Below the pieces are notes generated by a model. The model was not told the origin of the DNA. It worked only from the letters and a program-made list of their open reading frames with translations, and ran no database searches. 64,000 bases of DNA from Octopus sinensis (Eukaryota): positions 3,348,001 through 3,412,000 of the forward strand of contig NC_043026.1 of the NCBI RefSeq assembly GCF_006345805.1, given 5' to 3'. Of the stretch, positions 34,819 to 57,804 are shown piece by piece; the first letter of the stretch is position 1, and each line of letters begins with the position of its first letter. Made by a program: the position numbers and the translations under genes.

Positions 34819-34963
34819 ACGCGTGCGCACGAGATACATTTCCGTTTCCGTCTTGACATTATTGAATTGTTGGTTGAATGAATTTCTATTTCTAAACTTT
34901 TAATACATTTCTCATCTATTACAAATGCACTTATAACAACGTTATCCCCTATGAAACTTTTCC
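34819..34963 (+). promoter_or_regulatory. Putative promoter motif and non-coding exon 1 of ZNF gene 1
   Basis: ACGCGTGCGCAC (NRF1-like) at 34819-34830 and GTGAGT donor at 34964; homologous to 47445-47570 (-) and 48899-49062 (+). Confidence 0.6.
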
Positions 34964-35038
34964 GTGAGTATTTCATCAGTAGACGTTCAGTATTTGACTT
35001 TTCGATTGGCTGTGTTTCTCCAATTTTTTATGTATCAG

Positions 35039-35862
35039 AGATGTCTATGAATTGTACAAGATTTGGCTGCTATTTCTAGCTATGGAAGAGAGTTATCTAT
35101 GATTTAAGCGAGATCTGGTTGCTGTTTCTAGTTATGGAAGAGAAATCACTATGTTTCGTGCCAGATTTGGCTGCTATTTCTAGCAATGAAGAGATGTCCA
35201 TAATTTGTGCAAGATTTGGCTGCTATTTCTAGCTATGGAAGATAGTTATCTATGATTTAAGCGAGATCTGGTTGCTGTTTCTAGTTATGGAAGAGAAATC
35301 ACTATGTTTCGTGCCAGATTTGGCTGCTATTTCTAGCTATGGAAGTGAAATGTCTATGATTAGTGCAATATCTGGTTGCTATTTCTAGCTATGGATGAGA
35401 GATTTCTATTATTTGTGCAAGATTTGGCTGCTATTTCTAGCTATGGATGAGAGATGTCTATTATTTGTGCGATATCTGGCTGCTATTTCTAGCAATGGAA
35501 GAGATGTCCATAATTTGTGCAAGATTTGGCTGCTATTTCTAGCTATGGAAGTGAAATGTCTATGTTAGTTCGATATCTGGCTGCTATTTCTAGCTATGGA
35601 AGAGAGATGTCCATAATTTGTGCGAGATTTGGCTGCTATTTCTAGCTATGGATGAGAGATGTCTATTATTTGTGCGAGATTTGGCTGCTATTTCTAGCTA
35701 TGGAAGAGAAATGTCTATGATTAGTGCGATATCTGGCTGCTATTTCTAGCTATGGATGAGAGATGTCTATTATTTGTGCGAGATTTGGCTGCTATTTCTA
35801 GCTATGGAAGAGAAATGTCTATGATTTGTGCGAGATTTGGCTGCTATTTCTAGCTATGGAAG
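35039..35862 (+). repeat. 52-bp tandem array, ~16 diverged copies, in putative intron 1 of ZNF gene 1
   Basis: Unit ATTTGTGCGAGATTTGGCTGCTATTTCTAGCTATGGAAGAGAGATGTCTATG; period 52 (e.g. 35641 to 35693). Confidence 0.95.
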
Positions 35863-36867
35863 CCACATCCTCCATCGTTGCTGTGTTTGTTGTGTTTTGA
35901 GAAATATTCTCAAATACACCCCAACCGCTGAAATGTTGAGAAACCAATACTTTATTATTATTATTTATCGAATGTTTCTTGATATAACTACCGATGTGTG
36001 CTCACTCAACTAGCAATTTGATTCGTCATAACTTCGGGAAAAATGGATATTTTTGGTAATGAAATTTTCTAGAAATACTTTTCAGACAATGTGGATTACG
36101 AATATGTTGGAATTTGTTGTGAAAAAAATATAATTGGGAGAAAGGGTTACATGTTTTATGTCTTCGACTTTGTTTCCTCATATATTTTAACGACACAACT
36201 GTTCCCCACATCTGTCTTGTTATGAGGTGATGCAGATCAATCACAGGGAATATTGTGTGTCGCATGTATCTACGTACAACTCTTTATCTGTCTACCTCTG
36301 TCTCTTATGCTTTTCTCTTTGCGAGCTTTCACCTTCTATATATTTACCACATTCTCTCTCACTCTTTCTCTCTATATGTATATCTCTCGTGCTGATATTT
36401 GTATATGTCTTGAATCTGCAATTTTTAAGTAGTTTCTGTGTCTTACACTGTTGTTTCTTTATTATTTCAGGACATATCAAATGACATTGGGGTAACTGAA
36501 GATATTTCAAAATTTTTATCGTGTTTTGAAGACAAAGAAAATGCTATTGAAAGCAGATATATAATACGATTTCTGTAAAGTTATCATGGCATTCCAGTGC
36601 AATATATGCTCTGTTATTATTATCGAACGTTCCTTGCATTTCTGACTACAGTGTCAACAAAACGAATTTGTGTGCAAATTAAACTTGGATAAATTGAGAA
36701 AAAAGTTCTGAGACAAAGGTAACATTGGACAGAAATACAGTGATTGAAATATTGGCAAGGTATAACCTATAAGAACAAAATAAAAAATATATGTTTGCGT
36801 ATATATATTTATATATTTATCGTCATCATCATTATTATTATTATATATTGATTTGAAAAGAAAAATT

Positions 36868-38190
36868 ATGGATAAAAGCGAGAAACATACCGAATTGATT
36901 TTACCTGAAGACATGATAAAAGAGAGAAGTAAATTATCCTATGACTGTGATATCTGTGAAAAGACATTCTCTCTAAAAGGTAATTTGACTAAACACAAAC
37001 GTATTCATACAGGAGAGAAGCCATATCATTGTGATATCTGTGGTAAATCTTTCTCTGGGAGTACTGCCCTAACAATACACATACGTATTCATACAGGAGA
37101 GAAACCATATCGCTGTAATATCTGTGACAAATCATTTTCTCAAAATATTGACTTAAATAAGCACATTCGTATTCATACTGGGGAGAAGCCATATCATTGT
37201 GATATCTGTGGTAAATCATTCTCTCAAAGTGCTGTCTTAACTACACACAAGCGTGTTCATACGGGAGAGAAGCCATATCACTGTGATATCTGTGGTAAAT
37301 CATTCTCTCGAAGTTATCACTTGACTTCTCACAAACGTATTCATTCAGGAGAGAAGCCCTATTGTTGTGATATCTGTGGTAATTCATTCTCTGAAAGTAG
37401 TGTCTTAACTAAACACAAGCGTATTCATACAGCAGAGAAGCCATATCATTGTGATATCTGTGATAAATCATTCTCTGTAAGTAGTTACTTACGTAAACAT
37501 AAGCATATCCATACAGGAGAGAAGCCATTTCACTGTGATGTCTGTGACAAATCATTCTCTGCAAATAGTGACTTAACAAGACACAAATTTGTTCATACAG
37601 GAGAGAAACCATATCATTGTGATGTCTGTGGTAAATCATTCTCTGTAAGTAGTTACTTGGCTGAGCACAAAAGTTTTCATACAGAGGAAAGGCAATATCT
37701 CTGTGATATCTGTGGTAAATCATTCTCCAAATTTGGTACATTAACTAGACACATTCGTAGTCATACAGGAGAGAAACCATTTCATTGTAATATTTGTAGT
37801 AAATCATTCTCTGGAAGTAGCGACTTTACTAAACACAAACGTATTCATTCAGGCGAAAAGCCATTTCACTGTGATATTTGTGATAAATCATTCTCGCAAA
37901 GTTATAACTTGACTTCTCACAAACGTATTCATACAGGAGAGAAGCCACATCACTGTGATATCTGTGGTAAATCATTCTCTGCAAGTAGTAACTTAATTTC
38001 TCACAAACGTATCCATACAGGTGAAAAGCCATATGCCTGTGATATCTGTAGCAAATCATTCTCTCAAAGTAGTGACTTAACTAAACACAAACGTATTCAT
38101 ATGGGAGAGAAGGCATATCACTGTGACATTTGTGGTAAATCTTTCTCTGAAAGTCATAAGTTAAATAAACATACATCTACACATATGTAA
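36868..38190 (+). CDS. C2H2 zinc-finger protein (ZNF gene 1), 440 aa, 15 tandem fingers, no KRAB/BTB/SCAN domain
   Basis: Intact ORF of CxxC-x12-H-x3-H units with TGEKP linkers; first ATG at 36868; acceptor TTATTATTTCAG ending 36470. Confidence 0.95.
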
Positions 38191-38580
38191 GTGCAACTAT
38201 ATCAATGTCAAAACTTATAACAACAATAACAAACATTTTAGGCATCATCTGATGTAAGGGTAACCTTGTGCATTTTGCTATACAAGTAACTAATCCACTC
38301 GATATATCACCCACTTTTTAGGTTTGACATTTACTGATGCCAACCCCTTTACTTACCTCTTACTGTATGCCAGAATATGGTTTACTTTAAAAATTTGTTT
38401 TATGGAAAACAAAAATGGAAACATCTATAACTGCAAATGTTTTTATATAAGGAAGGAGTTTGATAATAACCTTCCAACACTATAGTTTTTATCTCTACAG
38501 CTATATCTCTATTGATGAGATAGTTTACCTCTGTGATATTTTTAATAAAAGTAATTTCTCCCAAACTTTGAATATGTTAC

Positions 38581-38791
38581 TCTTTACTCTTTTACTTGTT
38601 TCAGTCATTTGACTGCTGCCATGCTGGAGCACCGCCTTTAGTCGAGCAAATCGACCCCGGGTCTTATTCTTTGTAAGCCCAGTACTTATTCTATTGGTTT
38701 CTTTTGCCGAAGTGCTAAGTGACAGGGACGTAAACACACCAGCATCGGTTGTCAAGCAATGCTAGAGGGATAAACACAGACACACAAACAT

Positions 38792-38846
<55 letters not shown>

Positions 38847-39021
38847 CAAACATATATACGACAGGCTTTTTTCAGTTTCCGTCTACCAAATCCACTCACA
38901 AGGCATTGATTGGCCTGAGGCTATAGCAGAAGACACTTGCCCAAGATGCCACGCAGTGGGACTGAACCTGGAACCATGTGGTTGGTTAGCAAGCTACTTA
39001 CCACACAGCCACTCCTGCGCC
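38581..39021 (-). mobile_element. SINE family A, full length
   Basis: Reverse complement of 1582-1984 with an expanded internal (TA)n. Confidence 0.85.
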
Positions 39022-39237
39022 TTGTTACAAGAACTTTTATGTGAAACTATTTTTTGAAACCAATCTCTTGCTTTCTCAATGTTAAATAAGAAAATATTTT
39101 CTGGGATCCTAAGCATCAGTTACTGAGAAAAAGAAGTGAAATATAGACAACCAACAACCAGTGAGTGAATGTATAGGTTTTACTCATCGTGACTCCTCAT
39201 GAATGAATGTTTTTCAGAATATCCATATATATATATA

Positions 39238-39618
39238 TAGCTGTGATACCAGTGCCGGTGGCACGTAAAAAGCACCATCCGATCATGGCCATTTGCCAGC
39301 TTCGCCTGGCCCCCGTGCTGGTGGCACGTAAAAAGCACCAATCCGATCGTGGCCATTTGCCAGCCTCGCCTGGCCCCCGTGCCGGTGGCACGTAAATAGC
39401 ACCAATCCGATAGTGGCCATTGCCAGCCTCGCCTGGCACGTAAAAAGCACCCACTACACTCATGGAGTGGTTGGTGTTAGGAAGGGCATCCAGCTGTAGA
39501 AACATTGCCAGATCAGACTGGGCCTGTTGCAGCCTTCTTGCTTCCCAGACCCCAGTTGAACCATCCAACCCATGCTAGCATGGAAAGCGGACGCTAAACG
39601 AGGATGATGATGATGATA
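39238..39618 (+). mobile_element. Family C retroelement with ~3.5 internal ~60-bp repeats
   Basis: GGTGGCACGTAAAAAGCACC recurs; ends GATGATGATGAT. Confidence 0.8.
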
Positions 39619-40439
39619 TTTATTCCTTGTGAGTCTTTGTAGAAATGAGATGTTCTAGTCGAAGCATTTGATGGTGGAGGAGATAGAGATGTATAGCATA
39701 TATGACAACTGGAAGTTCCTAGGGAACAATCTACTGAGGGGCTATAGACCAAATATGTGGCTGGTGCAAAGTCCCAGCCAGGGGGACATAGTGTTGGAAC
39801 TGTGAGGTAGACGACAGTGTGATAAAATTAGAAAGGCTGGAAATATGGGGACAACAGAGAAATAGTAATTAAGTCAGTTTAATTAGTCGTACTAACCACT
39901 GGTTCCCTCATTGTTTTTTAAAGTATTCTACATGTGAGGTATCTCTGAATGTCTGCAATGTTTTTAAGGTTTGCTGATTTTTGTCTATAAAATAGATTCA
40001 TAAGACAGTAATTATCTCAGTTTAATTAATTTTGTAATCACTGATTTATTTGTAAATTCTGTTTTGGATATAACTACAGTTTAGTGCCCCACCCATGACT
40101 TTGTTTCCTCATAGCTCTCTTTAAAACTGATCACATTTTTAAATGAAATTTCTGCAAAATCTTTGCTAAGGTTTAGAATACATAGTGTTTTTATTTCACG
40201 CAATTATTTTTAAAAAATTGTGAAAATCCAAATTTATGGAAATTGATGATAACAAAACTGAGGTGGGGGTTGAGAAAGATTGGAAACTCCTCTAGAAAAA
40301 TGTTTTCCTAAATCTTTATGAAGATAATCATAATGTAAGTCCTCAAAAACTTATCACCCCAAAGTTTAATTTTAAAAATCTCATCTTTGTAAGATATACA
40401 TTTTTCTGAAAGTTACGTACATTGATAACACTTCCAATC

Positions 40440-40862
40440 AGTTAAGATCAAAAACCAGGTAAAACAGTAGGATTTCATCCATTTTTATGTTCTGAGTTCA
40501 AATTCCACCGAGGTCGACTTTGCCTTTCTACCTTTTGGGGTCCATGAAGTAACAGTCATGCACTAGGGATGATGTAATCGACTGGCTCCCTCCCCCAAAA
40601 CCCAAGGTCTTATGCTAATAACAGAAAGGATTATTATTATTATTTGGGTGGCAAGATGGCAGACACGTTAGCATGCAGATTAAAATACTTGGTGGAATTT
40701 CGTTTGGCTTCATGTTCTGAGTTCAAATTTTGCTGAGGTTGACTTTGCCTTTATCTTTTCTAGTCAATAAATCAAGTACCAGTTATGCACTGGGGTCAAT
40801 GTAATTGACTAGTCCCCTCACACCAGATTTCAGGCCTTGTGCCTTTAGTAAAAAGGATTTTT
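40440..40862 (+). mobile_element. Two tandem SINE family B copies
   Basis: CTGAGTTCAAATT B-box and central block at ~40490 and ~40717, each with its own tail. Confidence 0.7.
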
Positions 40863-41454
40863 ATTATTTTTATTTAAAAAGGGTCTGATTTGGCCCCATG
40901 AAGTCTTTTAGGCTCATCGTTGGAACCTAGCTTGTCAGGCTCAGATGATTAAATGCAGAGATAGAGGAATTCCAAAGTGGTTACTGGAGACTAGGATGTG
41001 ATTGGTCAAGGCAGGTCACATGGTGTTGTTGATAATAGTATTGAAATATGAGGGATATCAAATGCATATCTCAAGCTGTGTTTCTTGGATTGTGTGGTTG
41101 GGACATGTTGCTAGGGGTACGAATGCTCATATGCAAATGCCAGATGCACACAAGCACACATACACACACACAGATTCTTACATACACACATTCTTACATA
41201 CACTTACAAATACAGAAATGAGTATGTTCACACACACCAGACATTGGTATGCACACAAACTCATGCATCCCAGACATGTATGCATAGACACACGCCCACA
41301 GATGGTACTAATGCACATGTATACACACACACACACACACAGAGTCCTGCATATGTGCACTCACACAGTTGATACCCACCCTAGCAAACACGTATATACA
41401 CAGTTGAGCTGATGCCATCAGGTCACACACATATGCATTCATACAGCAGGTGAA

Positions 41455-41625
41455 CGCACACACTATCTATTCCTTTACTACCCACAAGGGGCTAAACATA
41501 GAGGGGACAAACAAGGACAGACATAGGTATTAAGTCGATCATATCAACCCCAGTGCGTAACTGGTACTTATTTAATCAACCCCAAAAGGATGAAAGGCAA
41601 AGTTGGTATTGCTTAAGTTTTTGCC
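41455..41625 (-). mobile_element. SINE fragment related to the family B central block
   Basis: Reverse complement contains AACTTTGCCTTTCATCCTTTTGGG..ATTAAATAAGTACCAGTTACGCACTGGGGTTGAT. Confidence 0.55.
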
Positions 41626-42480: not shown

Positions 42481-43852
42481 ATGTAGGAAACCGATGTACG
42501 CACAAACATACAAATGATTTAATATTTCGCTTAGACATAGTGAAACTGATAACCTGGAGTAGAACTCAAGATACAAAAAGTCCAGAACACAATGTTATAT
42601 GAGCGTAGAGCAGTAACAGAAAACAAAGAAATGACACTGGAAAATCTAAATGTTATCTGATGAGCAACTAAGAGTTCACCACATCTATAGCACAAACAAT
42701 TGTAAGCTAATGAAGTCTTTACACAACATTCAGATTTTCCAGTGTCATCTCTTTATGTGTGTGGGTGTGATCATAATCATATCGCTTAACATCCATTTTC
42801 AGTGCATGCATGGGCAGAACATGTGACAGAAGCCAGCCAGGTAGAAGACTACTCCAGGTTACTATGTCTGTTTTGGCAGGGTTTTTATGGCTGGATGCTT
42901 TTTACGTGACACCAGCAGTGGCAGGATCACCAAGTAACTTGCAAGACAAGGAATTTTGAGAGGGGCAGGGGCATTTGAAGAGGGAACTTGTGTCAGAGGA
43001 TGAAAGGTTAGAGTGTAACCGAGAGGCAGAGACAGAAACAGGGGTTTTGCTGTAATGGAGGAAATGATCTGGAGTCAGATGACGAAAGGTGAGAGAAACT
43101 TTGTCACCACACCATTCAGAAAGCTACAGATCAGTGTGATGAAAAATATTTTGTGGGACGCAAACATCAACTGCTTAAAAAAAAAAGAATAAATGAAAAA
43201 ACAAACAAACAAACATGTATTAGACTTTATTAATTATAGCTTTTCCCAAATATAACAATATTAGTTTCAACATAGTTTCAGATCAATACGAATTCAAAAG
43301 CGAGAAGAAATTGCCTTTATTAAAAATATCCCAGACATAAATTATCTCACCTGTGAAAATATAGTTGTTGTGAAATAAAATGTAGTATTGGGAGGCAGTT
43401 GCCACACACTGTTGTATCTCCTTCTTTATATGAATACATATTGATACAGATGAGCAATTTTTTATCTTATAGAGGAATTTTAACTAAAATCAATATCACT
43501 GTATGCTATAGGAGATATCTAAAGTGAGTTGCATCAAGAAGGGTCAACCAGCTGAAAATGACAGCTAAAAATACAGTGCCTCAACGTGTCAGTTATTGCT
43601 GAGATTAAAACCCACAAGGCTATTCACACTATAGGTAAAGGTCAAAATATTCGTTGTTGCTATGAAATTTTACATTGATATAGTTATACTTGTATATGAA
43701 TATATACATGTCTGCATCAGTGGCTACTTTCAGTGAAAGATTTACCACATACATCAGTGACATGGTTTCTCTCCTCTAAGAATATGTTTGCATTTAGCTA
43801 ATTGAAGACTTCCAGAGAATGATGTGCCATTGATATCACAATGGGATGGCTT

Positions 43853-44927
<1,075 letters not shown>

Positions 44928-45549
44928 TTACCTTCTCAAATCACAATGCATATATATTTCTTGCTTTTGTTCTTATACTTTATTCTTTACAATTACTCAT
45001 ACTGCTGTATTTTTGTCTAGTGTTACCTTTGTCTAAGAACTCTTGTAAATTTATTCAAGTTTAGTTTACACAATCTCATCTTGTAGACACTACAATCAGT
45101 GTACACATTTTGCTAATAATCACAGTTCAGAGGAAATATTTCACAGTAATTCTGCCAAAGATTTATAGAAACAGTGTTATATATCTCTTCAGTACAACAT
45201 TTTTCTTCAGTCTTCAAAAGATGATAGATAAGGAGCATATATCTCTTGGTATCCCAAACGTCATCAGATATTCTGAAATAATAAAGAAACAACAGTGAAA
45301 GATATAGAGGTTACTTTATAAATACAGATTCAACAGTGGAAAATCTACAACACGTCTGTAGAGAGGAACTGTAGAAATAAACATCTACCTCACAACTGAA
45401 CATTTTAATTTACTAGCAGAGACACCTGGTGTTGTCCGCAAATGAAATTTTGTATATTTTGGAAGAAAAAAGCAAAATATGTTGTATAGAATTTGTGATT
45501 CTAAATTCAATTTATTCTTCAATTGAGATACAATTTATTCCTTAATTAC

Positions 45550-45944
45550 TCTTTACTCTTTTACTTGTTTCAGTCATTTGACTGCGGCCATGCTGGAGTA
45601 CCGCCTTTAATCGAGCAACTTAACCCCGGGACTTATTCTTTTGTAAGCCCAGTACTTATTCTATCGGTCTCTTTTGTCGAACCGCTAAGTAACGGGGACA
45701 TAAACACCCCATCGGTTGTCAAGCAATGCTAGGAGGACAAACACAGACACACAGACATACACGCACACATGTATATATATATATACATTCTTTTCAGTTT
45801 CCGTCTACCAAATCCACTCACAAGGCTTTGGTCGGCCCGAAACTATAGTAGAAGACACTTGCCCAAGATGCCATGCAATGGGACTGAACCCGGAACCATG
45901 TGGTTGGTAAACAAGCTACTTACCACACAGCCACTCCTGCGCCT
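45550..45944 (-). mobile_element. SINE family A, full length (in putative intron 1 of ZNF gene 2)
   Basis: Reverse complement of 1582-1984. Confidence 0.85.
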
Positions 45945-46287
45945 ATTGGAAAATCAATTCTGAATTTATAATACAAAAATAATAATAATGATGATGATGA
46001 TAATAAAACGAAAATACAAAATTAACCCCTTTTATGAAAGGAGATAAATTCTACCGAAGTCCTCTCCCCACCCCTAGGAAAAGATTTTACCCACAAATTT
46101 CGTTATAATCGTAATGTATAAAATTTCATTTAAAAAAAATAAAACCATTTTCCTAAAAGTTATTAGGGAAAAACTCGGATCTTGTGAATTTTCCGAAGTC
46201 CTCTCCCCATCCCGCCGTTGCTTTCCACGCATTTTTCCTTTCATTTTCGTTTCCTGCTCCCCATTTTTTAATACCCGTTGCACTATT

Positions 46288-47339
46288 CATAGACACCTCT
46301 CTTCCATAGCTAGAAATAGCAGCCAAATCTCGCACAAATCATAGACACCTCTCTTCCATAACTAGAAATAGCAGCCAAATCTCGCACAAATCATAGACCC
46401 CTCTCTTCCATAGCTAGAAATAGCAGCCAAATCTCGCACAAATCATAGACACCATCTCTTTCATAGCTAGAAATAGCAGCCAAATCTCGCACAAATCATA
46501 GACACCTCTCTTCCATAGCTAGAAATAGCAGCCAAATCTTGCACAAATCATAGACACCTCTCTTCCATAGCTAGAAATAGCAGCCAAATCTCGCACAAAT
46601 CATAGACACCTCTCTTCCATAGCTAGAAATAGCTGCCAAATCTCGCACAAATCATAGACACACCTCTCTTCCATAGCTAGAAATAGCAGCCAAATCTCGC
46701 ACAAATCATAGACACCTCTCTTCCATAGCTAGAAATAGCAGCCAAATCTCGCACAAATCATATAGACACCTCTCTTCCATAGCTAGAAATAGCAGCCAAA
46801 TCTCGCACAATCATAGACACCTCTCTTTCATAGCTAGAAATAGCAGCCAAATCTCGCACAAATCATAGACACCTCTCTTCCATAGCTAGAATAGCAGCCA
46901 AATCTTGCACAAATCATAGACACCTCTCTTCCATAGCTAGAAATAGCAGCCAAATCTCGCACAAATCATAGACACCTCTCTTCCATAGCTAGAAATAGCT
47001 GCCAAATCTCGCACAAATCATAGACACCTCTCTTCCATAGCTAGAAATAGCAGCCAAATCTCGCACAAATCATAGACACCTCTCTTCCATAGCTAGAAAT
47101 AGCAGCCAAATCTCGCACAAATCATATAGACACCTCTCTTCCATAGCTAGAAATAGCAGCCAAATCTCGCACAAATCATAGACATCTCTCTTTCATAGCT
47201 AGAAATAGCAGCTAAATCTCGCACAAATCATAGACACCTCTCTTCCATAGCTAGAGATAGCAGCCAAATCTCGCACAAATCATAGACACCTCTCTTCCAT
47301 AGCTAGAAATAGCAGCCAAATCCCGCGCAAATCATAGAC
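46288..47339 (-). repeat. 52-bp tandem array, ~20 homogeneous copies, in putative intron 1 of ZNF gene 2
   Basis: CATAGACACCTCTCTTCCATAGCTAGAAATAGCAGCCAAATCTCGCACAAAT at 46288, 46340, 46392 and onward; reverse complement of the 35039-35862 unit. Confidence 0.97.
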
Positions 47340-47444
47340 ATCATTCATTCATAAAAGATAGAAAAAACACAAAGAATCGAGTCGTCAAATATCGAAAGTC
47401 TACAGAATTAAAAAGACTGAATATTTTCCTTGTTTAATACTTAC

Positions 47445-47570
47445 AGCAATGTTTTATAAAGGATAGTGTTGTTTACAAAGTATTATAAATGTATTCATAA
47501 ATTCAAGCAATGGACATAAATAATTCGATGCTAAAATGGAAAGAGATGGACGCATGGTGCGCATGCGCGT
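47445..47570 (-). promoter_or_regulatory. Putative promoter motif and non-coding exon 1 of ZNF gene 2
   Basis: TGCGCATGCGCG at 47558-47569 (full NRF1 consensus match) and minus-strand GTAAGT donor at 47444. Confidence 0.62.
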
Positions 47571-47966: not shown

Positions 47967-48010
<44 letters not shown>

Positions 48011-48011
<1 letters not shown>

Positions 48012-48400
48012 CTCTTTTACTCTTTTACTTGTTTCAGTCATTTGACTGTGGCCATGCTGGAGCACCGCCTTTAGTCGAGCAGATCGACCCCGGAACTTAT
48101 TCTTTTGTAAGCCCAGTACTTATTCAATCGGTCTCTTTTGCCGAACCGCTAAGTTACGGGGACGTAAACACACCAGCATCGGTTGTCAAGCAATGCTAGG
48201 GGACAAACACACACACACATATATATATACATATATACGACAGGCTTCTTTCAGTTTCCGTCTACCAAATCCACTCACAAGGCATTGGTCGGCCCGGGGC
48301 TATAGCAGAAGACACTTGCCCAAGATGCCACGCAGTGGGACTGAACCCGAACCATGTGGTTGGTTAGCAAGCTATTTACCACACAGCCACTCCTGCGCCT
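48011..48400 (-). mobile_element. SINE family A, full length, between the divergent ZNF promoters
   Basis: Reverse complement of 1582-1984. Confidence 0.85.
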
Positions 48401-48898
48401 ATGTATAATATTTATATATTATTTTTTTAGGGAATAAAAATTCCGGGATCTTTGATTTTAGCTCAATAGAGGCAATAGGATTGGTTAAAATTCGAAAACG
48501 TAGCTTAATTCGAAAAATTAAGCTACGTTAAACTTACAAATTACAATTTTCTCAAGAAAGCCAAGAGAAAAAAAAATGTGGAATCCAATGTAGATCCCAA
48601 CAAATATCTTACAAACTATAGAATTTTCTCAATAAAGCCAAGAGAAAAAGATGTTTTATAAACACATTCTACCAGTATACGAAGTTTAAAAGTGTTTAGT
48701 TAACTAGAAATTGTGTTAAAAATCTGCCGGTCAAAGCGAAAAGATCCAAATAAAGTTTGCCTTTCACCTTTTTGCTGGGGTTCAATAAAATAAATACCAG
48801 TTAACAACTGAGGTCCGCGGTAATCGACTTACGCACCCTCCCCTCCCCCGAAATTGCTGGCATTGTGCCAAAATGTGAATATCTCACACCTATTACAT

Positions 48899-49062
48899 AC
48901 GCATGCGCACTAAGCCTATTTCCGCTTCTATTCATTACATCTTGACAAGCTTTGTTTGGCGCCAGAATTTCTATTAATTCACTCGGCAATACATTTATAA
49001 AACATTTCTCTACCACCTGACGCACTCATAACAACGACACCATCTTTTATAAAGACATTTCC
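48899..49062 (+). promoter_or_regulatory. Putative promoter motif and non-coding exon 1 of ZNF gene 3
   Basis: ACGCATGCGCAC at 48899-48910 and GTAAGT donor at 49063; exon and donor flanks align with the other two paralogs. Confidence 0.62.
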
Positions 49063-49675
49063 GTAAGTATTAAACAATGAAAACATTTAATCTTTCAATA
49101 ATTCGTGTATCAGATTTTGTTCCACATTTAGCTGCTATTTCTAGCTATGGTGGCTACCTTCTACTCTCTCCATCGTTTCCTCTTAAGTTTGTTGGGTATT
49201 TTAGTTGGAGAAATATCCCAAATACTCTACAACCCCAGAAATGTTGAGAAACGAATGTTTTATTATAATTTATCGAATGTTCGTTTCTTGGTATCGGGAA
49301 GGGGAAGAAATAGTAAGCGGGGCAAAATGAGTAATTTCTTATTATTTTCTTACCATTATGACATTGGTTAGAAAGATTTCAACTGAAATCATTGTAGGTT
49401 TTAGCCAGAATTATTCTAAAGGACATTTCAGAACTCTTCTGGAAACTTCCGTGGGATGTTATAAAATCCTGGGCTTTTTTTTCCGATTTTTACTTAGTGA
49501 ATCGCTTGCTTTCTGGAAGCTACTCATTCCCACATAGTTCTTGTTTTGTAAAATTAAAGATACCCGACGTTGCTTTCCTCCATAATGACCAAAAGTCATA
49601 AAGTTATAAACTTGAAGAAAGAAAGCCTTGCATATTCGTTCTACACCCGTTTCATGTGTGTATGTAAAATCGGTT

Positions 49676-51596
49676 AATATAGGGCGTAACAAATATCAGA
49701 AAATCAAAAAAAAAATGTGTGTAATAGGTGTAAAACAACTTCCTATGAACGAATATGAAAAAAAAAATTCGCGCACGCGAAAGGGGGGTGGGAGAGAGGC
49801 CTCGGAAAATTCACATCGGGAAGTTCCGAAAGCGTCTGAGGAGCTGACCCGGGCACCAAAACAAAAAAAAAATAGTGTAATATGTGTAAAACAACTTGCT
49901 CTAAACGAATATGACAAAAAAAAATGCGCTCTCGCGAAAGAGGGGTGGGGGAGAGGCCTCGGAATATTTATATCGGGAATTTCCGAAAGCGTCTGAACCG
50001 GGCACAAAAACAAAAACAAAAACAGCGTAATAGGTGTAAAACAACTTGCTCTAAACGACTATCATGAAAAAAATGCGCGCTCGCGAAAGGGGGGTGGGGG
50101 AGAGGCTTCGGAAATTTCACATCTTCAGTCCACGGCCTTTAAACTAAGAAAAAATAGTGTAATTGGTGTAAAACTACTTGTTCTAAACGAGTATCAAGAA
50201 CACACACTCACACATGAATCATAAACTCCGTATTTCGCAAAAAAAAAAATAATAAAGAGAAGAAATTCTGGAAAAAGTGAAGAAATGTTGGATCTCCGCC
50301 ATGTGAATCAAAATACGTGTCAGAAACATCTTGAAATACTACAGAAATTATGTTACGAAAATGATAATGTATACATACCTCTTTGAGTGGTCCATCGATA
50401 ACGATGATAAAGAAATGAGTTGGATTTGAACTCAGAATATTGACTAACACAACTACATACTACAAGACTCAAAATATTCAGCCAAGTCACCACCCTTTAA
50501 CTAGCAATAATAATAACATCAATAACATAACAGCCAAAAGATTTATTTGTTCTGAAAATAACAATCATAGTAAATAAATATGTTCTTTAATATTCACATT
50601 CATGTGCACAGTTAAACACACTTACATACAAACAGTCACGCATGCATAATACAGAACGGAACACATAAATGAAGGATGCATTACTTAGTATATATTACAT
50701 CGAGAGAATTTTGATTAATAAGTCAAATATGCAAATTATAAAGATAATTAATTGCTTTACTAAACAGTGTTGTAAAGGTGAAAAAATAAATTTGGGAAAA
50801 AAATACACGCCAAAACTAATTAATAAAGGATAATTAGGGAAGGATTGACACAAAATAATTATTTTTTCTGTCTCTTTTTTTCTGATAAATGCATCTTAAT
50901 AAGTGAGAAGAATTGCATATATCTGAACTATTTCAAAGAAAAGCATAAATTTAATGTTTAAAATAGCTTTAACCAAGGAATGAGATCCAACATTTCTTCA
51001 CTTTTTCCAGAATTTCTTCTCTTTATTTTTTTTTTTTTTGCGAAATACGGAGTTTATGATTCATGTGTGAGTGTGTGTTCTTGATACTCGTTTAGAACAA
51101 GTAGTTTTACACCAATTACACTATTTTTTCTTAGTTTAAAGGCCGTGGACTGAAGATGTGAAATTTCCGAAGCCTCTCCCCCACCCCCCTTTCGCGAGCG
51201 CGCATTTTTTTCATGATAGTCGTTTAGAGCAAGTTGTTTTACACCTATTACGCTGTTTTTGTTTTTGTGCCCGGTTCAGACGCTTTCGGAAATTCCCGAT
51301 ATAAATATTCCGAGGCCTCTCCCCCACCCCTCTTTCGCGAGAGCGCATTTTTTTTTGTCATATTCGTTTAGAGCAAGTTGTTTTACACATATTACACTAT
51401 TTTTTTTTTGTTTTGGTGCCCGGGTCAGCTCCTCAGACGCTTTCGGAACTTCCCGATGTGAATTTTCCGAGGCCTCTCCCCCACCCCCCTTTCGCGTGCG
51501 CGAATTTTTTTTTTCATATTCGTTCATAGGAAGTTGTTTTACACCTATTACACACATTTTTTTTTTGATTTTCTGATATTTGTTACGCCCTATATT
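49676..51596. mobile_element. Foldback-type element: ~620-bp near-identical modular TIRs around a 685-bp AT-rich spacer
   Basis: 49676-50296 is the reverse complement of 50982-51596; arms contain ~3.3 modules of ~140-155 bp; TATGTAAAATC flanks both sides (49661-49671 and 51597-51607). Confidence 0.85.
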
Positions 51597-52004
51597 TATG
51601 TAAAATCTGCAAATTTCCAAACAGAATCGAACTGTCATTTGCTTCCACGGAAATATCCGAAGTGAAATGGTTTGACTTTTGTCGAGTTATATCGAAGGAA
51701 TGCCGTCATAAGTCTTGTACTAGCTTCAGATTTGTTTGAATGAAACTGAGAGGTGCTTTAATTCTTGTCATCTCTGTGGGACGTAGCTTTCAGACCGGAA
51801 TTTAGGGCCGCCTTCCCGTTTAATCACATAGTTCTTTATTGACGAATGGAAATTACTCTCCAGTATTTATATGGAATTGAATTTGGTAAAATGAACGAGA
51901 ACCAAATGAAAATATCTTTGGAATTGACGCTTTAATACGTCTCCAGGAAAGGTATTTGACCGCTCTTGTCATTTTATCAAGAGCAAGTAGTAAAAGAAAT
52001 CAGT

Positions 52005-52460
52005 TTTAAGTGAAAAAATGTTTCCGAAAGTCATGGGAGCTGTGCTGTTTTCTGATTTTGTAAATAAGCCGACAGGTGGAGTTTGAAAAGGGGCTCAGAG
52101 TTATTGTTAATGAGATGGTTAATAATTTTATGGGTGTCTGCATATGCAGTAATGTACAAATGTCTGGGAAGTGAACAGTGTATGAGTCAGATATATGCTT
52201 GCGTGTGTATGGAGGGGAGAAAATCAGGTGTAGTGTTGGCGAATCTCAGGAAGCATGGAAGATTTGAAGGATGCAGTGCTCCAACAACTAACTACTGATG
52301 CCGGCAGTTTGTTCCATGCTTCAGCAACTCTCAGCGTGAAAAAATGTTTCCTAAAGTCATGGGAGCTGTGCTGTTTTCTGACTTTGTAAATATGTCCACG
52401 GGTGTTAGACAGGTGGAGTTCAAAAAGGGGCTCAGAGTTATTGTTTGTAAGATGGTTAAA
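52005..52460 (-). mobile_element. Two adjacent CR1-type 3' fragments
   Basis: Minus strand LSNTRGHIYKVRKQHSSHDFRKHFFTLRVAEAWNKLPASVV; same family as 33985-34480. Confidence 0.8.
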
Positions 52461-52479
52461 TGAAGGGCACATGTCAATC

Positions 52480-52766
52480 CCAACATCCGAATCGTAGCCG
52501 AAGCCAGTGCCGCCTCGACTGGCTTCCATAAAATGCACCAATCCGACCGTGGCCGATGCCAGCCTCGCCTGGCACCAGTGCAGGTGGCACGTAAAAAGCA
52601 CCCACTACACTCACGGAGTGGTTGGCGTTAGGAAGGGCATCCAGCTGTAGAAACTTTGCCAGATAAGACCGGAGCCTGGTGCAGCCTTCTGGCTTCCCAG
52701 ATCCCCGGTCGAACCGTCCAACCCATGCTAGCATGGAGAACGGACGTTAAATGATGATGATGATGA
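52480..52766 (+). mobile_element. Family C retroelement
   Basis: GGTGGCACGTAAAAAGCACCCACTACACTCACGG..GGAAGGGCATCC..ATGATGATGATGATG. Confidence 0.8.
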
Positions 52767-53619
52767 TCTTTGTGGGAATATCTCATTCAACCATAATAAA
52801 TATGAAGACAGCCAAATAGAAACTGAAGAACATCTACACCACTTTCTGCATCGAATGTTTGTTTCTTGATATAGAGAAAGGGAACAAAACTTAGTAGGTG
52901 GGGCAAAATGAGTAATTTCTTTCACCTTTTTTAAAATTTTTTCTCTTTTTTTTCCCTTCAGTCTTTAAAGTCATGTTTTCAGTATTGACCTCTTTGGTGG
53001 GAAACCTGACTGCTGAGAAGCAAGCAGATGACTTAGTGGCAACTGAGAGGAGAGAAACAGCCCTATAATTGTTGCAGTTGTGGTAGGCTCCTTTACCCTC
53101 CTACAATGGGATAATGACACCTCTTTCCCTGTCAGGCTTTTCTAATTCCAATCAACAGAACAGCCTACTCTTCAAATTAACATGTAAGTGGCTGAGCACC
53201 CCACAGACACGCTCACCCATAACGGAGCTCTCACATATTAAGCATGTGACCATGTGATAAGGCTGGCCCTTCAAATTACTCGTACAATTCAGTTTTGTCA
53301 GCTGAGTGAACCTGGAGCAACATGTCTTGCTCAACAACACAGCACACTGCTGGGAATTGGAATTATGACCTTATTAGGAGCTGATTGCTCAGACCACTAA
53401 CCCCAATACCTTCACATACACACACATGTATATACATACACATACATATATATTAACGTGTAAGCATATATATATATATATATGTTTCCAGGTTCAATCC
53501 CACTGCGTACCTACTTAGGCAAGTATTTTATACAATAGACATTAGCCGACCAAATCCTTGTGATTGGATTTGGTAGATAGAAACTGAAGGAAGCCCAATA
53601 TATATATATATATATATAT

Positions 53620-53849
53620 ATCACAATCAAGGAACGGCCATAATAGGCCATTCACCCACTAGAAATAACAGCCAAAGCTTCAACCGCAAATAACATTAAT
53701 TCCGCAAACCAGGAGAAAATTAAAAAACATTTACCCTGTAATTTTTAATTTTCTCCTGGTTTGCGGAATTAATGTTATTTTGCGGTTGAAGCTTTGGCTG
53801 TTATTTCTAGTGGGTGAATGGCCTATTATGGCCGTTCCTTGATTGTGAT
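53620..53849. repeat. Near-perfect palindrome, ~107-bp arms, 15-nt loop
   Basis: 53620-53726 is the reverse complement of 53742-53849 with a single 1-nt indel; loop ACATTTACCCTGTAA. Confidence 0.95.
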
Positions 53850-54809
53850 GTTGAACTTATAAATGGTCTATGACTATTTAATTTTTTCCCACTAGGCCGC
53901 TGGTGGCAAAGAAATTCTACAAAATTTTTTTGCCACCCTATATTGATTAATATATTATATATATATATATATATATTAATGAGTATTTATGTGTATATAC
54001 ATATATATCTCTGTGTGTCTTTGTGACTGTTTGACGCCCCACCAACACTTGATAACCAGTGTTGGTGTGTATATGTCACCATTATTTAGTGGTTTCACAA
54101 AAGAGGCCAATATAAGTACTAGGCTCAAAAGTGAAGTCCTAGGGTTGATTTGATCAACTAACACCTTCTAAGGTGATGCTCCAGTATAGCCACAGCCAAA
54201 ACAACTGATACAAGGAAAAGTATATATATATATACATATATATATATGTGTGTGTGTGTGTGTGAATGTGTAGCTGGAGTTTAAAAATATGTTAGCTTCA
54301 CAGAAGATTTTCTGATGTAAATTCTAATAAATTAGAAAGTTCTGTTGTTCAGTTAAATGTTTATTTCTAGAATTTATCTCTATGGAAATGTTGAATCTGT
54401 ATTTTTTAAGTAGCCTCTCTATCTTACACTGTTGTTTCTTTATTATTTCAGAATATCAGATGACATTGGCATAACTGAAGATACATCCTCATTATTTATC
54501 ATCTTTTTAAAGACCAAAATGGAAATATTGTACAGAACAGATATATAAGATTGTTTCTCTAAATCTATGGCAGAATTCCTCTGATATATTTACTCTGAAA
54601 AGTATTATTAGCAAACCTTCTGGACATCACTGGCTGGAGTGTCTACAAGATGAGTCTTTGTTCAAACTAAACTTGGATAAATTTACTAAAGAACTTTGGG
54701 ACAAAGGTGATAAGGGACAGAAATAGAGCAGTCGAAATATTTGGAAACAAAATACTATAGAATCAAAAAGGTGAAAAAAGATATATACTGTGATTTTTGA
54801 AGAAAAATA

Positions 54810-55925
54810 ATGGAAAAGAGTGAGAAAATAAAGAAACTGATTTTTCCAGAAAATAGAGAAAAAGGGAGCCAAAAATTGTCACATGAGTGTGATGTCTGTA
54901 AAAAGTCTTTCTCTCAAAAGAGCAGCTTGAATACGCACAAACGTATTCATAGAGGAGAGAAGCCATTTCATTGTGACATTTGTGATAAATCATTCTCTCA
55001 GAGTTGTAACTTGAGTACACACAAACGTATTCATACAGGAGAGAAGCCATTTCACTGTAATGTCTGTAGTAGGTCATTCTCTAACCACAATGCTTTAAAT
55101 TCTCATATACGTGTTCATACAGGGGAGAAGCCATTTCACTGTGACACTTGTGGTAAATCATTCTCTATAAATGTTTCACTGACTAAACACAAACGTATTC
55201 ATACTGGAGAGAAGCCATATCACTGTGATGTCTGTGGTAAATCATTCACTCAAAATGGTAATTTATCTATACACAAGCAAATTCATACAGGAGAGAAGCC
55301 ATTTCACTGTGATGTCTGTGGTACATCATTCTCTCAGCGGAGTTCTTTAGATTCTCACAAGCGTTTTCATACAGGAGAGAAGCCATTTCACTGTGACATC
55401 TGTGACAAATCATTCCGGGGAAAAGACAGCTTGACCAAACACCGACGTATTCATATAGGAGATAAGCCATATGACTGTGACATTTGTGGTATATCATTCC
55501 CTCAGAAAGGTAGCTTGACTTCACACAAACGTATTCATACTGGAGAAAAGCCGTTTCACTGTAATGTCTGCAGTGCATCATTCTCTCAGCAAAGTGCCTT
55601 GGAGTCTCACATACGTGTTCATACAGGAGAGAAGCCATTTCACTGTGACATCTGTGGTAAATCTTTCCCTCAAAGTAATAACTTGACTATACACCAACTT
55701 GTTCATACAGGAGAGAAACCGTTTCACTGTGACACTTGTGGTAAATCATTCTCTCAAAAAAGTAACTTGACTAGGCACATACGTGTTCATACAGCAGAGA
55801 AGCCCTATCACTGTGATATCTGTGGTACATCATTCTCAGACCAAAGTGTTTTAAAATGTCACAAACGTAATCATGCCAGCGAGAGGCCTTATCACTGTGG
55901 TGTACTCGTATACATGCTCATATAG
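54810..55925 (+). CDS. C2H2 zinc-finger protein (ZNF gene 3), 371 aa, 12 fingers
   Basis: Intact ORF with TGEKP-linked fingers; N-terminus MEKSEK..LIFPE..EK..KLSH homologous to genes 1 and 2; acceptor ending 54451. Confidence 0.93.
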   Translation: MEKSEKIKKLIFPENREKGSQKLSHECDVCKKSFSQKSSLNTHKRIHRGEKPFHCDICDKSFSQSCNLSTHKRIHTGEKPFHCNVCSRSFSNHNALNSHIRVHTGEKPFHCDTCGKSFSINVSLTKHKRIHTGEKPYHCDVCGKSFTQNGNLSIHKQIHTGEKPFHCDVCGTSFSQRSSLDSHKRFHTGEKPFHCDICDKSFRGKDSLTKHRRIHIGDKPYDCDICGISFPQKGSLTSHKRIHTGEKPFHCNVCSASFSQQSALESHIRVHTGEKPFHCDICGKSFPQSNNLTIHQLVHTGEKPFHCDTCGKSFSQKSNLTRHIRVHTAEKPYHCDICGTSFSDQSVLKCHKRNHASERPYHCGVLVYMLI

Positions 55926-56620: not shown

Positions 56621-56664
56621 TGATATTTGTGCTAAAACATTCCCTGTAAGTGACGACTTAACCC

Positions 56665-56880: not shown

Positions 56881-56911
<31 letters not shown>

Positions 56912-57792: not shown

Positions 57793-57804
57793 CCCTCAGT
57801 GTAG

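What the first reader, a model, noticed from the sequence alone, without database searches (positions are those of the whole stretch)
34819..54810. Three ZNF paralogs share a complete hidden gene architecture
Seen in all three, in gene orientation: (1) the 10-mer CGCRTGCGCA (reverse TGCGCAYGCG) at 34819, 47557 and 48899; (2) an alignable 110-150-nt segment ending in a GTRAGTA donor (34964, 47444, 49063); (3) an intron of 1507, 2172 and 5389 bp beginning with homologous sequence; (4) an identical acceptor CACTGTTGTTTCTTTATTATTTCAG (36470, 45273, 54451); (5) one exon holding ~350-400 nt of UTR plus the whole finger array. Established: the motif matches the NRF1/EWG consensus, and octopus genomes have large clustered C2H2-ZNF expansions lacking KRAB. 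Inference: the family expands as whole promoter-bearing cassettes under one upstream regulator, a module that could be mapped genome-wide.
Basis: partly seen in the sequence, partly recalled or inferred. Interest (0 to 1): 0.8.

Follow-up and report, generated by a model that had tools for sequence, protein, structure and literature searches.

The report
Shared 5' architecture of octopus zinc-finger genes
Three neighbouring zinc-finger genes of Octopus sinensis do share one layout (NRF1-like site, short non-coding first exon, intron, invariant splice acceptor, one big coding exon), and parts of it recur in 15 more copies on other chromosomes. It is the ordinary result of whole-gene duplication, with a plausible but untested common regulator.

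Summary
The window is Octopus sinensis chromosome CM016888.1. The 10-mer occurs three times (0.03 expected by chance), the 25-nt acceptor three times exactly (0 expected), and the intron lengths of 1507, 2172 and 5389 bp are exact.

I fetched paralogous loci and scanned them with two sequence profiles. The acceptor, leader and finger exon recur in 18 of 18 units sampled, on six chromosome records of two species, and 17 keep the AG. The first-exon module with its GTRAGTA donor recurs in only 7 units, all of the MEKSEK subfamily.

Five of those 7 keep the site (RCGCNTGCGC), which matches the NRF1 consensus or a variant that human NRF1 binds with about 4-fold lower affinity. Two lost it through changes of the CpG-decay type. 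Some copies (L003, L005c) lack the first-exon module altogether.

G2 carries two 1-bp deletions in this assembly and evolves almost neutrally. The G3 coding sequence is identical in O. vulgaris. A 52-bp element repeated 1-35 times in the intron is a further shared part.

I could obtain no RNA, transcription-start or binding data, so the splicing, the start site and NRF1 control remain inferences. This is a real but largely ordinary gene-family structure, of moderate interest.

The parts
34819..34829 (+). G1 NRF1-like site, ACGCGTGCGCA (RCGCNTGCGC with A at the first position)
   Evidence: It is the only conserved block in the first ~115 alignment columns of the five motif-retaining units.
34830..34963 (+). 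G1 inferred non-coding exon 1. The 3' end is fixed by the donor; the 5' end (transcription start) is unknown and assumed to lie near the motif.
34964..36470 (+). G1 5'UTR intron, 1507 bp, from donor GTGAGTA to acceptor TTTCAG
35037..35862 (+). 52-bp tandem repeat in the G1 intron, 16 copies, with the palindromic core GCTA-TTTC-TAGC
36446..36470 (+). G1 invariant 3' splice-site 25-mer
36471..36867 (+). G1 exon-2 leader (5'UTR), 397 nt. With exon 1, the inferred spliced leader holds 8 upstream ATGs and 8-11 stops in each frame.
36868..38190 (+). G1 coding sequence, 440 aa: a 26-aa N-terminal leader followed by 15 C2H2 fingers
43851..44924 (-). G2 coding region. It is homologous to an intact 357-aa ORF in O. 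vulgaris, but here it is interrupted by two 1-bp deletions (AAA to AA), near 44544 and 44125.
44925..45272 (-). G2 exon-2 leader, 348 nt
45273..45297 (-). G2 invariant 3' splice-site 25-mer
45273..47444 (-). G2 5'UTR intron, 2172 bp. It includes a SINE-like insertion at 45548-45944 that is absent from O. vulgaris.
46280..47340 (-). 52-bp tandem repeat in the G2 intron: 20.3 copies here and about 35 in O. vulgaris
47445..47557 (-). G2 inferred non-coding exon 1 (5' end unknown)
47558..47568 (-). G2 NRF1 consensus site. It contains GCGCATGCGC exactly.
48899..48909 (+). G3 NRF1-like site, ACGCATGCGCA
   Evidence: It is unchanged in O. vulgaris.
48910..49062 (+). G3 inferred non-coding exon 1 (5' end unknown). 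There are 0 substitutions against O. vulgaris.
49063..54451 (+). G3 5'UTR intron, 5389 bp. It holds one 52-bp-like unit at 49126-49150 and a 1.9-kb DNA-transposon insertion at 49672-51596 that is absent from O. vulgaris.
54427..54451 (+). G3 invariant 3' splice-site 25-mer
54452..54809 (+). G3 exon-2 leader, 358 nt
54810..55925 (+). G3 coding sequence, 371 aa with 12 fingers. It is identical at the DNA level to the O. vulgaris ortholog.

Best explanation
G1, G2 and G3 are three old DNA-level duplicates of one complete transcription unit. They belong to the KRAB-less C2H2 zinc-finger family of Octopus sinensis.

Each unit has these parts, in order:
- a promoter with no evident TATA box, whose only deeply conserved element is an NRF1-type palindrome (RCGCNTGCGC), often followed by an ETS-like TTCCG;
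- a short non-coding exon 1, about 115-155 nt if transcription starts near the site, ending in GTRAGTA;
- a 1.5-5.4-kb intron that begins with a conserved ~70 nt and a 52-bp repeat, and otherwise accumulates transposable elements;
- a nearly invariant branch/polypyrimidine/TTTCAG acceptor;
- one exon carrying a ~350-nt leader rich in upstream ATGs, a 25-aa N-terminal peptide, the whole finger array and the 3'UTR.

The family grew by segmental duplication, both tandem and inverted. The intron was retained, so retroposition is excluded. Selection has kept the splice signals and, in active copies, the promoter site. Copies lose the site by changes of the CpG-to-TpG/CpA type, and some copies were duplicated or converted without the first exon.

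What is shown: the sequence anatomy, its recurrence in other loci, the pattern of conservation, and the fit to the NRF1 consensus. What is inferred: that the donor and acceptor are spliced to each other, that transcription starts near the motif, and that an octopus NRF1/EWG homologue binds it.
For: Motif and acceptor occur three times each, far above chance.

Conservation along the unit among G1, G2 and G3: upstream of the motif it is at the shuffled level (0.27-0.41 against 0.28-0.33). The motif is 9/10 invariant. The last 100 nt of the intron are 0.62-0.76 identical, the leader 0.58-0.73 and the coding sequence 0.75-0.82. Synonymous divergence is dS 0.64-0.79, so an invariant 25-mer is not neutral.

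Recurrence of exon 2: the acceptor+leader profile finds 18 units in the window, L003-L008 and O. vulgaris, each directly upstream of a finger array where one is present. The AG is kept in 17 of 18.

Recurrence of exon 1: the exon-1 profile finds 7 units on three chromosomes. All have GT(A/G)AGTA at the aligned position and lie 1.5-5.5 kb upstream of an acceptor in the same orientation.

Across the five motif-retaining units, the site is the only conserved block in the first ~115 alignment columns.

All 8 RCGCNTGCGC sites in ~304 kb of sampled octopus DNA lie 1.6-8 kb upstream of a family acceptor.

The site in L005b and L005d is exactly the ATaCGCATGCGCAT oligonucleotide that human NRF1 binds with Kd 1.27 uM, against 0.31 uM for the consensus.

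The leader has 6-16 stops per frame, so it is non-coding.

Between species, the motif, exon 1, acceptor and coding sequence of G3 are unchanged, while the flanks differ by 0.5-1.4%.
Against: No transcript, CAGE, ATAC or binding data could be reached, so splicing and the transcription start are untested.

Conservation around the donor is as strong in the first ~70 nt of the 'intron' as in the exon. The block could therefore be something other than an exon end.

The exon-side donor context (TCC/GCT before GT) is poor.

Similarity of the leader (58-73%) is only moderately above what dS 0.64-0.79 predicts for neutral DNA.

All motif copies are homologous by descent, so they do not count as independent enrichment.

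Two of seven modules lack the site. L003 and L005c lack the module, and the divergent subfamilies show no recognisable exon 1.

The G1 site differs from the full 12-nt palindrome at 3 positions.

I did not check whether octopus has an NRF1 orthologue.
Confidence: 0.65

Rival explanations
1. The shared blocks are only relics of common descent. The duplicated segment happened to start near the motif, and neither the motif nor the 'first exon' has a function. Transcription would start elsewhere, for example just upstream of or inside the leader.
For: All copies of the motif are homologous, and homology among G1-G3 begins about at the motif. Leader identity is not far above the neutral expectation. 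Two modules lost the motif and two units lack the module. There are no RNA data.
Against: At dS 0.64-0.79, a 25-mer invariant in four units and 22-23/25 identical in the next closest cannot be neutral. GT and AG are kept at the aligned positions in 7/7 and 17/18 units. The CpG-rich 10-mer survives in a sequence with CpG observed/expected of 0.64, while its flanks are randomised between subgroups.
Confidence: 0.15
2. The block formed by the exon-1-like sequence, the first ~70 nt of the intron and the 52-bp repeat is not an exon. It would be an upstream or intronic regulatory module (an enhancer or silencer, possibly repeat-derived) for a transcript that starts elsewhere, and the GTRAGTA would be incidental.
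For: Conservation runs straight through the donor into the 'intron'. The 52-bp unit is conserved far better than neutral: the G1 and G2 consensus units differ at 1/52 although dS is 0.64. A single unit persists even in the divergent L006 and L008 units.
Against: A conserved strong acceptor needs an upstream donor. The only conserved GTRAGTA within reach, in the right orientation and 1.5-5.5 kb away in 7 units, is this one. The block is not a dispersed repeat, because it is found only upstream of family members.
Confidence: 0.12
3. The motif is functional but is read by something other than NRF1/EWG. Candidates are another factor that recognises CGCATGCG-like palindromes, or the site acting as an unmethylated CpG seed that keeps the promoter open.
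For: Only sequence similarity links it to NRF1. Four of the five sites have A instead of the first G. The copies that lost the site did so by CpG-type transitions, and they have fewer CpGs overall (5 against 7-11).
Against: The invariant part is TGCGCA, which contains the TGCGC half-site that NRF1 recognises, and the A variant is still bound by human NRF1. NRF1 homologues are reported in fly, sea urchin and fish.
Confidence: 0.08

Closest known systems
Mammalian KRAB-ZNF gene clusters
   Same: They are lineage-specific tandem clusters of poly-C2H2 genes that grew by segmental duplication of whole genes. They have a short 5' exon or exons, with all fingers and the 3'UTR in one large last exon, and fingers that evolve fast while the framework is conserved (my own knowledge; PMC2443715 and PMC4592553 were listed).
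   Different: There is no effector-domain exon here. Pfam finds only C2H2 families, and the non-finger part is a 25-aa peptide encoded in the same exon as the fingers. The upstream exon is entirely non-coding.
Zebrafish chromosome-4 FiNZ zinc-finger genes with shared promoter architecture
   Same: Hundreds of paralogs share a gene structure and a recognisable promoter type that sets a common expression programme (PMC10547256, citing Hadzhiev et al.).
   Different: Part of the zebrafish family (the early, sharp-peak genes) uses a TATA-box promoter, and the family has a FiNZ exon. Here the shared element is an NRF1-type palindrome with no evident TATA box, and co-expression has not been shown. 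The 2025 cephalopod C2H2 study instead reports paralogs in different co-expression modules (PMC12513265).
NRF1/EWG/P3A2-dependent promoters
   Same: The site is a GCGCNTGCGC palindrome placed where a proximal promoter would be. An ETS-like TTCCG often lies nearby, as in the classical NRF-1 plus GABP promoters (consensus and affinities from PMC10810270; the GABP pairing is from my own knowledge).
   Different: Binding, transcription start and factor are untested in octopus. Four of the five sites are the weaker A variant.
Chromatin marking of human ZNF gene 3' exons (H3K9me3, ZNF274)
   Same: It is a family-wide sequence feature inside ZNF genes that recruits a common factor. This makes it a possible analogue for the conserved 52-bp intronic repeat (PMC3039671, listed; its mechanism is from my own knowledge).
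   Different: The octopus element lies in the 5'UTR intron, not in the finger exon, and nothing is known of its chromatin state. This is only an analogy.

Membership tests
KRAB-less poly-C2H2 zinc-finger genes of octopus | Tandem C2H2 fingers joined by TGEKP-type linkers | tested here: met
   15, 10 and 12 fingers were found by pattern. Pfam zf-C2H2 and zf-H2C2_2 score E 1e-64 to 1e-123.
KRAB-less poly-C2H2 zinc-finger genes of octopus | No KRAB, SCAN or BTB effector domain | tested here: met
   Only zinc-finger-type families appear among the best 25 Pfam hits shown for G1 and G3. The non-finger N-terminus is only 25-26 aa.
KRAB-less poly-C2H2 zinc-finger genes of octopus | Source organism and clustered arrangement | tested here: met
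   The window is 100% identical to O. sinensis GCA_006345805.1 CM016888.1. It holds three genes plus a remnant within 24 kb, and clusters were also seen in L005 and L008.
U2-type spliceosomal intron in the 5'UTR | GT donor fitting GTRAGT | tested here: met
   GTGAGTA or GTAAGTA is present in 7/7 first-exon modules at the aligned position. The exon-side context is weak.
U2-type spliceosomal intron in the 5'UTR | Polypyrimidine tract followed by a YAG acceptor, conserved among paralogs | tested here: met
   TTTCAG is preceded by a T/C-rich tract in 17/18 units. The 25-mer is invariant in G1-G3 and L003.
U2-type spliceosomal intron in the 5'UTR | The junction is observed in RNA | not testable with these tools
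   No transcript collection for octopus was reachable. The look-ups returned only genome assemblies.
NRF1/EWG/P3A2 binding site | GCGCNTGCGC palindrome (two TGCGC half-sites with a 2-bp centre) | tested here: met
   G2 matches exactly. G1, G3, L005b and L005d match except for A at the first G. That variant is bound by human NRF1 with Kd 1.27 against 0.31 uM.
NRF1/EWG/P3A2 binding site | Lies in the proximal promoter near the transcription start | not testable with these tools
   There are no transcription-start data. The position 114-155 nt upstream of the donor is compatible.
NRF1/EWG/P3A2 binding site | Bound by the organism's NRF1 homologue | not tested
   I did not look for an octopus NRF1. 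Homologues in fly, sea urchin and fish are reported in PMC10810270.
Processed retrogene copies | Intronless copy of the mRNA with a poly(A) remnant and target-site duplication | tested here: not met
   Every unit keeps the acceptor and intron sequence, and seven keep the donor and exon 1 in genomic arrangement.
KRAB-ZNF / FiNZ-ZNF type architecture | A separate exon encoding an N-terminal effector domain upstream of the finger exon | tested here: not met
   The spliced leader has 6-16 stops in every frame, and the ATG lies in the finger exon.

The most novel reading that the evidence does not exclude
The NRF1-like site (with its ETS-like neighbour) and the conserved 52-bp palindrome-cored repeat at the start of the 5'UTR intron together form a family-wide cis-regulatory 'address'. 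One or two trans-factors would use it to switch a whole subfamily of octopus zinc-finger genes on or off. For the repeat, the analogue would be the ZNF274/KAP1 marking of human ZNF genes. CpG decay of the site would mark copies that have been permanently silenced.
Probability: 0.15. Interest if true: 0.6.

Novelty: new member of a known kind. Interest (0 to 1): 0.35.

Why it matters
Octopus genomes carry a very large expansion of C2H2 zinc-finger genes (my own knowledge). The 2025 cephalopod C2H2 study that I checked contains none of the words exon, intron, promoter, motif or UTR.

Practical uses:
- The conserved acceptor-leader and first-exon profiles give a cheap way to find the true 5' ends and promoters of these genes genome-wide. 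The gene ranges called for these loci begin at the ATG.
- They help separate live copies from decayed ones.
- They make it possible to ask whether a subfamily shares a regulator.

The finding itself is what whole-gene duplication predicts, so its value is practical rather than conceptual, unless the NRF1 site or the 52-bp intronic repeat proves to coordinate expression.

Tried and rejected
1. The search for homologous proteins with G3 returned mostly long vertebrate zinc-finger proteins, no cephalopod protein and not even the query itself. Neither G1 nor G3 is in that protein collection.

2. What worked was the N-terminal profile searched against the representative library. The few hits that matched from residue 1 (P0126, P0139, P0155, P0178, P0220) were accepted by the look-up of encoding contigs. 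P0186, picked for its octopus-type fingers, was also accepted.

3. I looked for RNA evidence. Every look-up returned genome assemblies only. P0205 and P0269 were not on record. P0184 was a metagenome contig, L009, in which neither profile found anything.

4. Coding potential of the leader or exon 1 is rejected: there are 6-16 stops per frame and no conserved ORF.

5. Retrogene origin is rejected, because the intron is retained.

6. A known structured RNA in the region is rejected: Rfam gave 0 hits at gathering score.

7. I asked whether the first-exon module is a dispersed transposable element. It is not: the profile hits only upstream of family members.

8. I looked for a first exon in L006 next to its 52-bp unit. 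An AAG|GTGAGTA donor exists at about 25597 (minus strand), but part of the sequence leading up to it resembles window 48680-48760, so it may be repeat-derived. I left this open.

9. Literature searches for an octopus ZNF promoter or NRF1 link found nothing specific.

Full report
**1. What is in the sequence**

- CGCRTGCGCA occurs exactly three times in 64 kb, at 34820 (+), 47558-47567 (-) and 48900 (+). Shuffles give 0.03.
- The 25-mer CACTGTTGTTTCTTTATTATTTCAG occurs exactly three times even with 3 mismatches allowed, ending at 36470, 45273 (minus strand) and 54451. Shuffles give 0.
- The donors are GTGAGTA at 34964, GTAAGTA at 47444 (minus strand) and GTAAGTA at 49063. This gives introns of 1507, 2172 and 5389 bp.
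- The aligned ATG lies 397, 348 and 358 nt downstream of the acceptor.
- The ATG is followed by a 25-26-aa N-terminal peptide (MEKSEK..LIFPE..IKE.SKLSY) and then 15, 10 and 12 C2H2 fingers. Pfam finds only C2H2-type families, with no KRAB, SCAN or BTB.
- The inferred spliced leader cannot be coding: it has 6-16 stops in every frame and 4-10 upstream ATGs.

**2. Source and orthologue**

The G3 protein is encoded on Octopus sinensis GCA_006345805.1 CM016888.1, which is 100% identical to the window. It is also encoded on O. vulgaris GCA_951406725.2 OX597841.1, at about 98% identity (locus L002). In O. vulgaris both motifs and both acceptors of G2 and G3 are unchanged.

Differences between the two species, by feature:
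- G3 coding sequence: 0 of 1116 positions.
- G3 exon 1: 0 of 153.
- Last 100 nt of the G3 intron: 0 of 100.
- Neighbouring introns and flanks: 0.5-1.4%.

G2 behaves differently. It has 21 substitutions in 1074 positions, 14 non-synonymous and 5 synonymous, giving dN/dS of about 0.68. The window sequence has two 1-bp deletions (AAA to AA, near 44544 and 44125), while O. vulgaris keeps a 357-aa ORF that has itself lost a zinc-binding histidine. G2 is therefore under relaxed constraint. The deletions could be real, or they could be long-read homopolymer errors.

Intron length differences come from insertions and repeat copy number. These are a SINE-like element (45548-45944), a 1.9-kb DNA transposon (49672-51596) and the 52-bp repeat.

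**3. How conserved is each part among the three paralogs?**

| Part | Pairwise identity | Shuffled control |
|---|---|---|
| Upstream of the motif | 0.27-0.41 | 0.28-0.33 |
| Motif | 9/10 invariant | n/a |
| Rest of exon 1 | 0.36-0.53 | 0.34 |
| Last 100 nt of the intron | 0.62-0.76 | 0.40 |
| Exon-2 leader | 0.58-0.73 | 0.34 |
| Coding sequence | 0.75-0.82 | 0.33 |

- Within exon 1, only the last ~35 nt are well conserved.
- The interior of the intron is not alignable, apart from the 52-bp tandem repeat shared by G1 (16 copies) and G2 (20 copies); G3 has one unit.
- Synonymous divergence over the first 128 codons is dS 0.64-0.79. These are therefore old duplicates, tens of times older than the sinensis/vulgaris split.
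- At that age an invariant 25-mer and a 9/10 CpG-rich 10-mer are not neutral survivals. CpG observed/expected for the window is 0.64, against 1.15-1.33 around the sites.
- The leader, by contrast, is only moderately above the neutral expectation.

**4. Does the layout generalise?**

The protein word-index search was useless here. A profile of the 41 N-terminal residues, searched against the representative library, did recover subfamily members, and their loci could be fetched:
- L003: O. vulgaris, same chromosome, 6.9 Mb.
- L004, L005, L006: O. sinensis CM016876.1, CM016862.1 and CM016865.1.
- L007: CM016888.1 at 10.6 Mb.
- L008: O. vulgaris OX597842.1.

An nhmmer profile of the acceptor plus leader finds 18 units: three in the window, one in L003, two in L004, four in L005, two in L006, one in L007 and five in L008.
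- Where a finger array is present, the unit lies directly upstream of it.
- The core ACTGTTGTTTCT..TTTCAG|A.(C/T)ATCA is preserved, and the AG is kept in 17 of 18 units; L005b has TTTCAAAG.
- The leader is consistently about 345-400 nt long.
- This is strong comparative evidence that the acceptor is real and ancestral to a wide part of the family, including subfamilies with a different N-terminus (MENELCEN and similar).

A profile of the first-exon module finds only 7 units: G1, G2, G3, L004 3930-4200, and L005 5766-6043, 18402-18674 and 32999-33263.
- All belong to the MEKSEK subfamily.
- All lie 1.5-5.5 kb upstream of an acceptor in the same orientation.
- All have GT(A/G)AGTA at the aligned column.
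- The profile finds nothing in L003, L006, L007 or L008, and nothing upstream of L005c, even at relaxed thresholds for L003, L006 and L007.

**5. The motif**

In the seven modules the site is:
- ACGCGTGCGCA in G1;
- GCGCATGCGCA in G2;
- ACGCATGCGCA in G3, L005b and L005d;
- decayed in L004 (..TTTCATGAGAC..) and L005a (ACACATATGAA).

In L005a the CpGs have gone to CpA or TpG; L004 keeps only the central CATG. Those two modules also have fewer CpGs overall, 5 against 7-11.

Across the five retaining units, the site is the only conserved block in the first ~115 alignment columns.

All 8 RCGCNTGCGC sites in about 304 kb of sampled octopus DNA lie upstream of family acceptors:
- five lie in first-exon modules;
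- a pair of perfect sites lies in unique CpG-rich DNA 8 kb upstream of the L003 acceptor;
- one lies 3.5 kb upstream of an L008 acceptor.

The structural study of NRF1 gives GCGCNTGCGC as the consensus. It reports that ATaCGCATGCGCAT, letter for letter the L005b/d site, is bound by human NRF1 with Kd 1.27 uM against 0.31 uM for the consensus. It also notes homologues in fly (EWG), sea urchin (P3A2) and zebrafish (PMC10810270). The sequence fit is therefore genuine. Binding in octopus, and the position of the transcription start, are not tested.

**6. Limits of the 'promoter-bearing cassette' idea**

The closest sampled paralog of G3 is L003.
- The two are 91% identical from 190 bp upstream of the acceptor to just short of the ATG.
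- Their coding sequences are only 80% identical.
- Nothing further upstream is alignable apart from transposable-element copies.

Either this copy was made without exon 1 and the promoter, or the leader has been homogenised by gene conversion. Together with L005c (no module), the two decayed sites and the absence of a recognisable module in the divergent subfamilies, this means that only part of the family carries the complete cassette.

**7.

The 52-bp unit GAGATTTGGCTGCTATTTCTAGCTATGGAAGAGAGATGTCTATGATTTGTGC has the core palindrome GCTA-TTTC-TAGC.
- It sits in sense orientation in the 5'UTR intron of G1, G2, G3, L004b and L005a-d, and upstream of the acceptors of L006b and one L008 unit, in 1 to 35 copies.
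- The consensus units of G1 and G2 differ at 1 of 52 positions although dS is 0.64.
- This points to constraint on the unit or to exchange between the arrays.
- Its function is unknown.

**8. Verdict**

This is a real, conserved two-exon transcription-unit design of an octopus zinc-finger subfamily, spread by DNA-level duplication. It has a credible NRF1-type promoter element. It is of the same kind as the shared architectures of mammalian KRAB-ZNF and zebrafish FiNZ-ZNF clusters, but without an effector exon.

I found no description of it in the literature I could search. The finding is useful for annotation and for testing co-regulation, but it is not surprising in kind.

My confidence is:
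- about 0.85 that the acceptor/leader exon is real;
- about 0.7 that the first exon and donor are real;
- about 0.4-0.5 that NRF1 controls these genes.

Noticed in passing
window 43851-44924 (-), near 44544 and 44125: G2 has two 1-bp deletions (AAA to AA in CACAAACG) relative to an intact 357-aa O. vulgaris ORF. Between the species it has 14 non-synonymous and 5 synonymous changes, and O. vulgaris has lost a zinc-binding His. G2 is either a decaying gene, or the deletions are homopolymer errors in the assembly.
   Followed up: partly
window 54810-55925: The G3 coding sequence has 0 substitutions in 1116 bp against O. vulgaris, not even synonymous ones, while the flanks differ by 0.5-1.4%. About 10 would be expected if it were neutral.
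   Followed up: partly
window 35037-35862, 46280-47340, 49126-49150; L002 3059-4836: A 52-bp intronic tandem repeat with a palindromic core (GCTATTTCTAGC). Copy number is 16, 20 and 1 in the three genes, and about 35 in O. vulgaris G2. The unit is much better conserved between G1 and G2 than synonymous sites are.
   Followed up: partly
window 49672-51596: A 1.9-kb insertion in the G3 intron that is absent from O. vulgaris. It has ~25-bp terminal inverted repeats (AATATAGGGCGTAACAAATATCAGA), ~620-bp inverted arms and an 11-bp target-site duplication (TATGTAAAATC). It is a recently active DNA transposon.
   Followed up: partly
window 45548-45944; related copies at 1582-1985, 13742-14168, 38578-39025, 48012-48404, 56672-57082: A ~400-bp SINE-like repeat family. 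The copy in the G2 intron, and a 947-bp block downstream of G3 (56322-57268) that contains another copy, are absent from O. vulgaris, so these insertions postdate the species split.
   Followed up: partly
L003 1180-1211: Two perfect NRF1 consensus sites 12 bp apart, in unique CpG-rich DNA 8 kb upstream of the acceptor of a G3-like paralog that lacks the usual first-exon module. This could be a replacement promoter or the promoter of another gene.
   Followed up: partly
window 34845-34856, 48923-48928; L004 ~3988-3995; L005 ~18481-18488; L008 ~17588-17596: ETS-like TTCCG / CCGGAAGT-type elements lie 15-50 nt downstream of the NRF1-like site in most modules. G2 has TTTCCA at the corresponding place. 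This recalls the classical NRF1 + GABP pairing. I did not test it statistically.
   Followed up: no
window 36868-36945, 44847-44924 (-), 54810-54887; P0126, P0139, P0155, P0178, P0205, P0220: A short N-terminal peptide (MEKSEK..LIFPE(D/E)MIKE..K.SY, or ME.EL.E...(I/M).F(P/S)(D/E)..L.E in divergent copies) is conserved ahead of the first finger across subfamilies. It may be a small effector or interaction motif standing in for KRAB.
   Followed up: no
window 36471-36490, 45253-45272 (-), 54452-54470: The first ~15 nt of exon 2 (A.(C/T)ATCA.ATGAC) are nearly as conserved as the acceptor. In most units they contain an upstream ATG that opens a 4-codon ORF (MTLG*/MTLA*). This could be a splicing enhancer or a regulatory upstream ORF.
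   Followed up: partly
window 56398-58293: A fourth, degenerate finger array with in-frame stops and no acceptor/leader module. O. vulgaris has a 220-aa gene called at the corresponding place (L002 12000-12736).
   Followed up: partly
window 10423-11976, 22017-22496, 31176-32773: Long ORFs in the first half of the window look like transposable-element genes: an integrase/RNase H-like ORF, a Tc1/mariner-like transposase fragment, and LINE-like endonuclease and reverse transcriptase. This is judged by eye only.
   Followed up: no
L005 22446-22470 and 23039-23266: Unit L005b keeps the NRF1-like site and the first exon, but its acceptor reads TTTCAAAG and its finger array is short and degenerate. 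The next unit, L005c, has a good acceptor but no first exon of its own. L005c may use the L005b promoter, or both may be pseudogenes.
   Followed up: no
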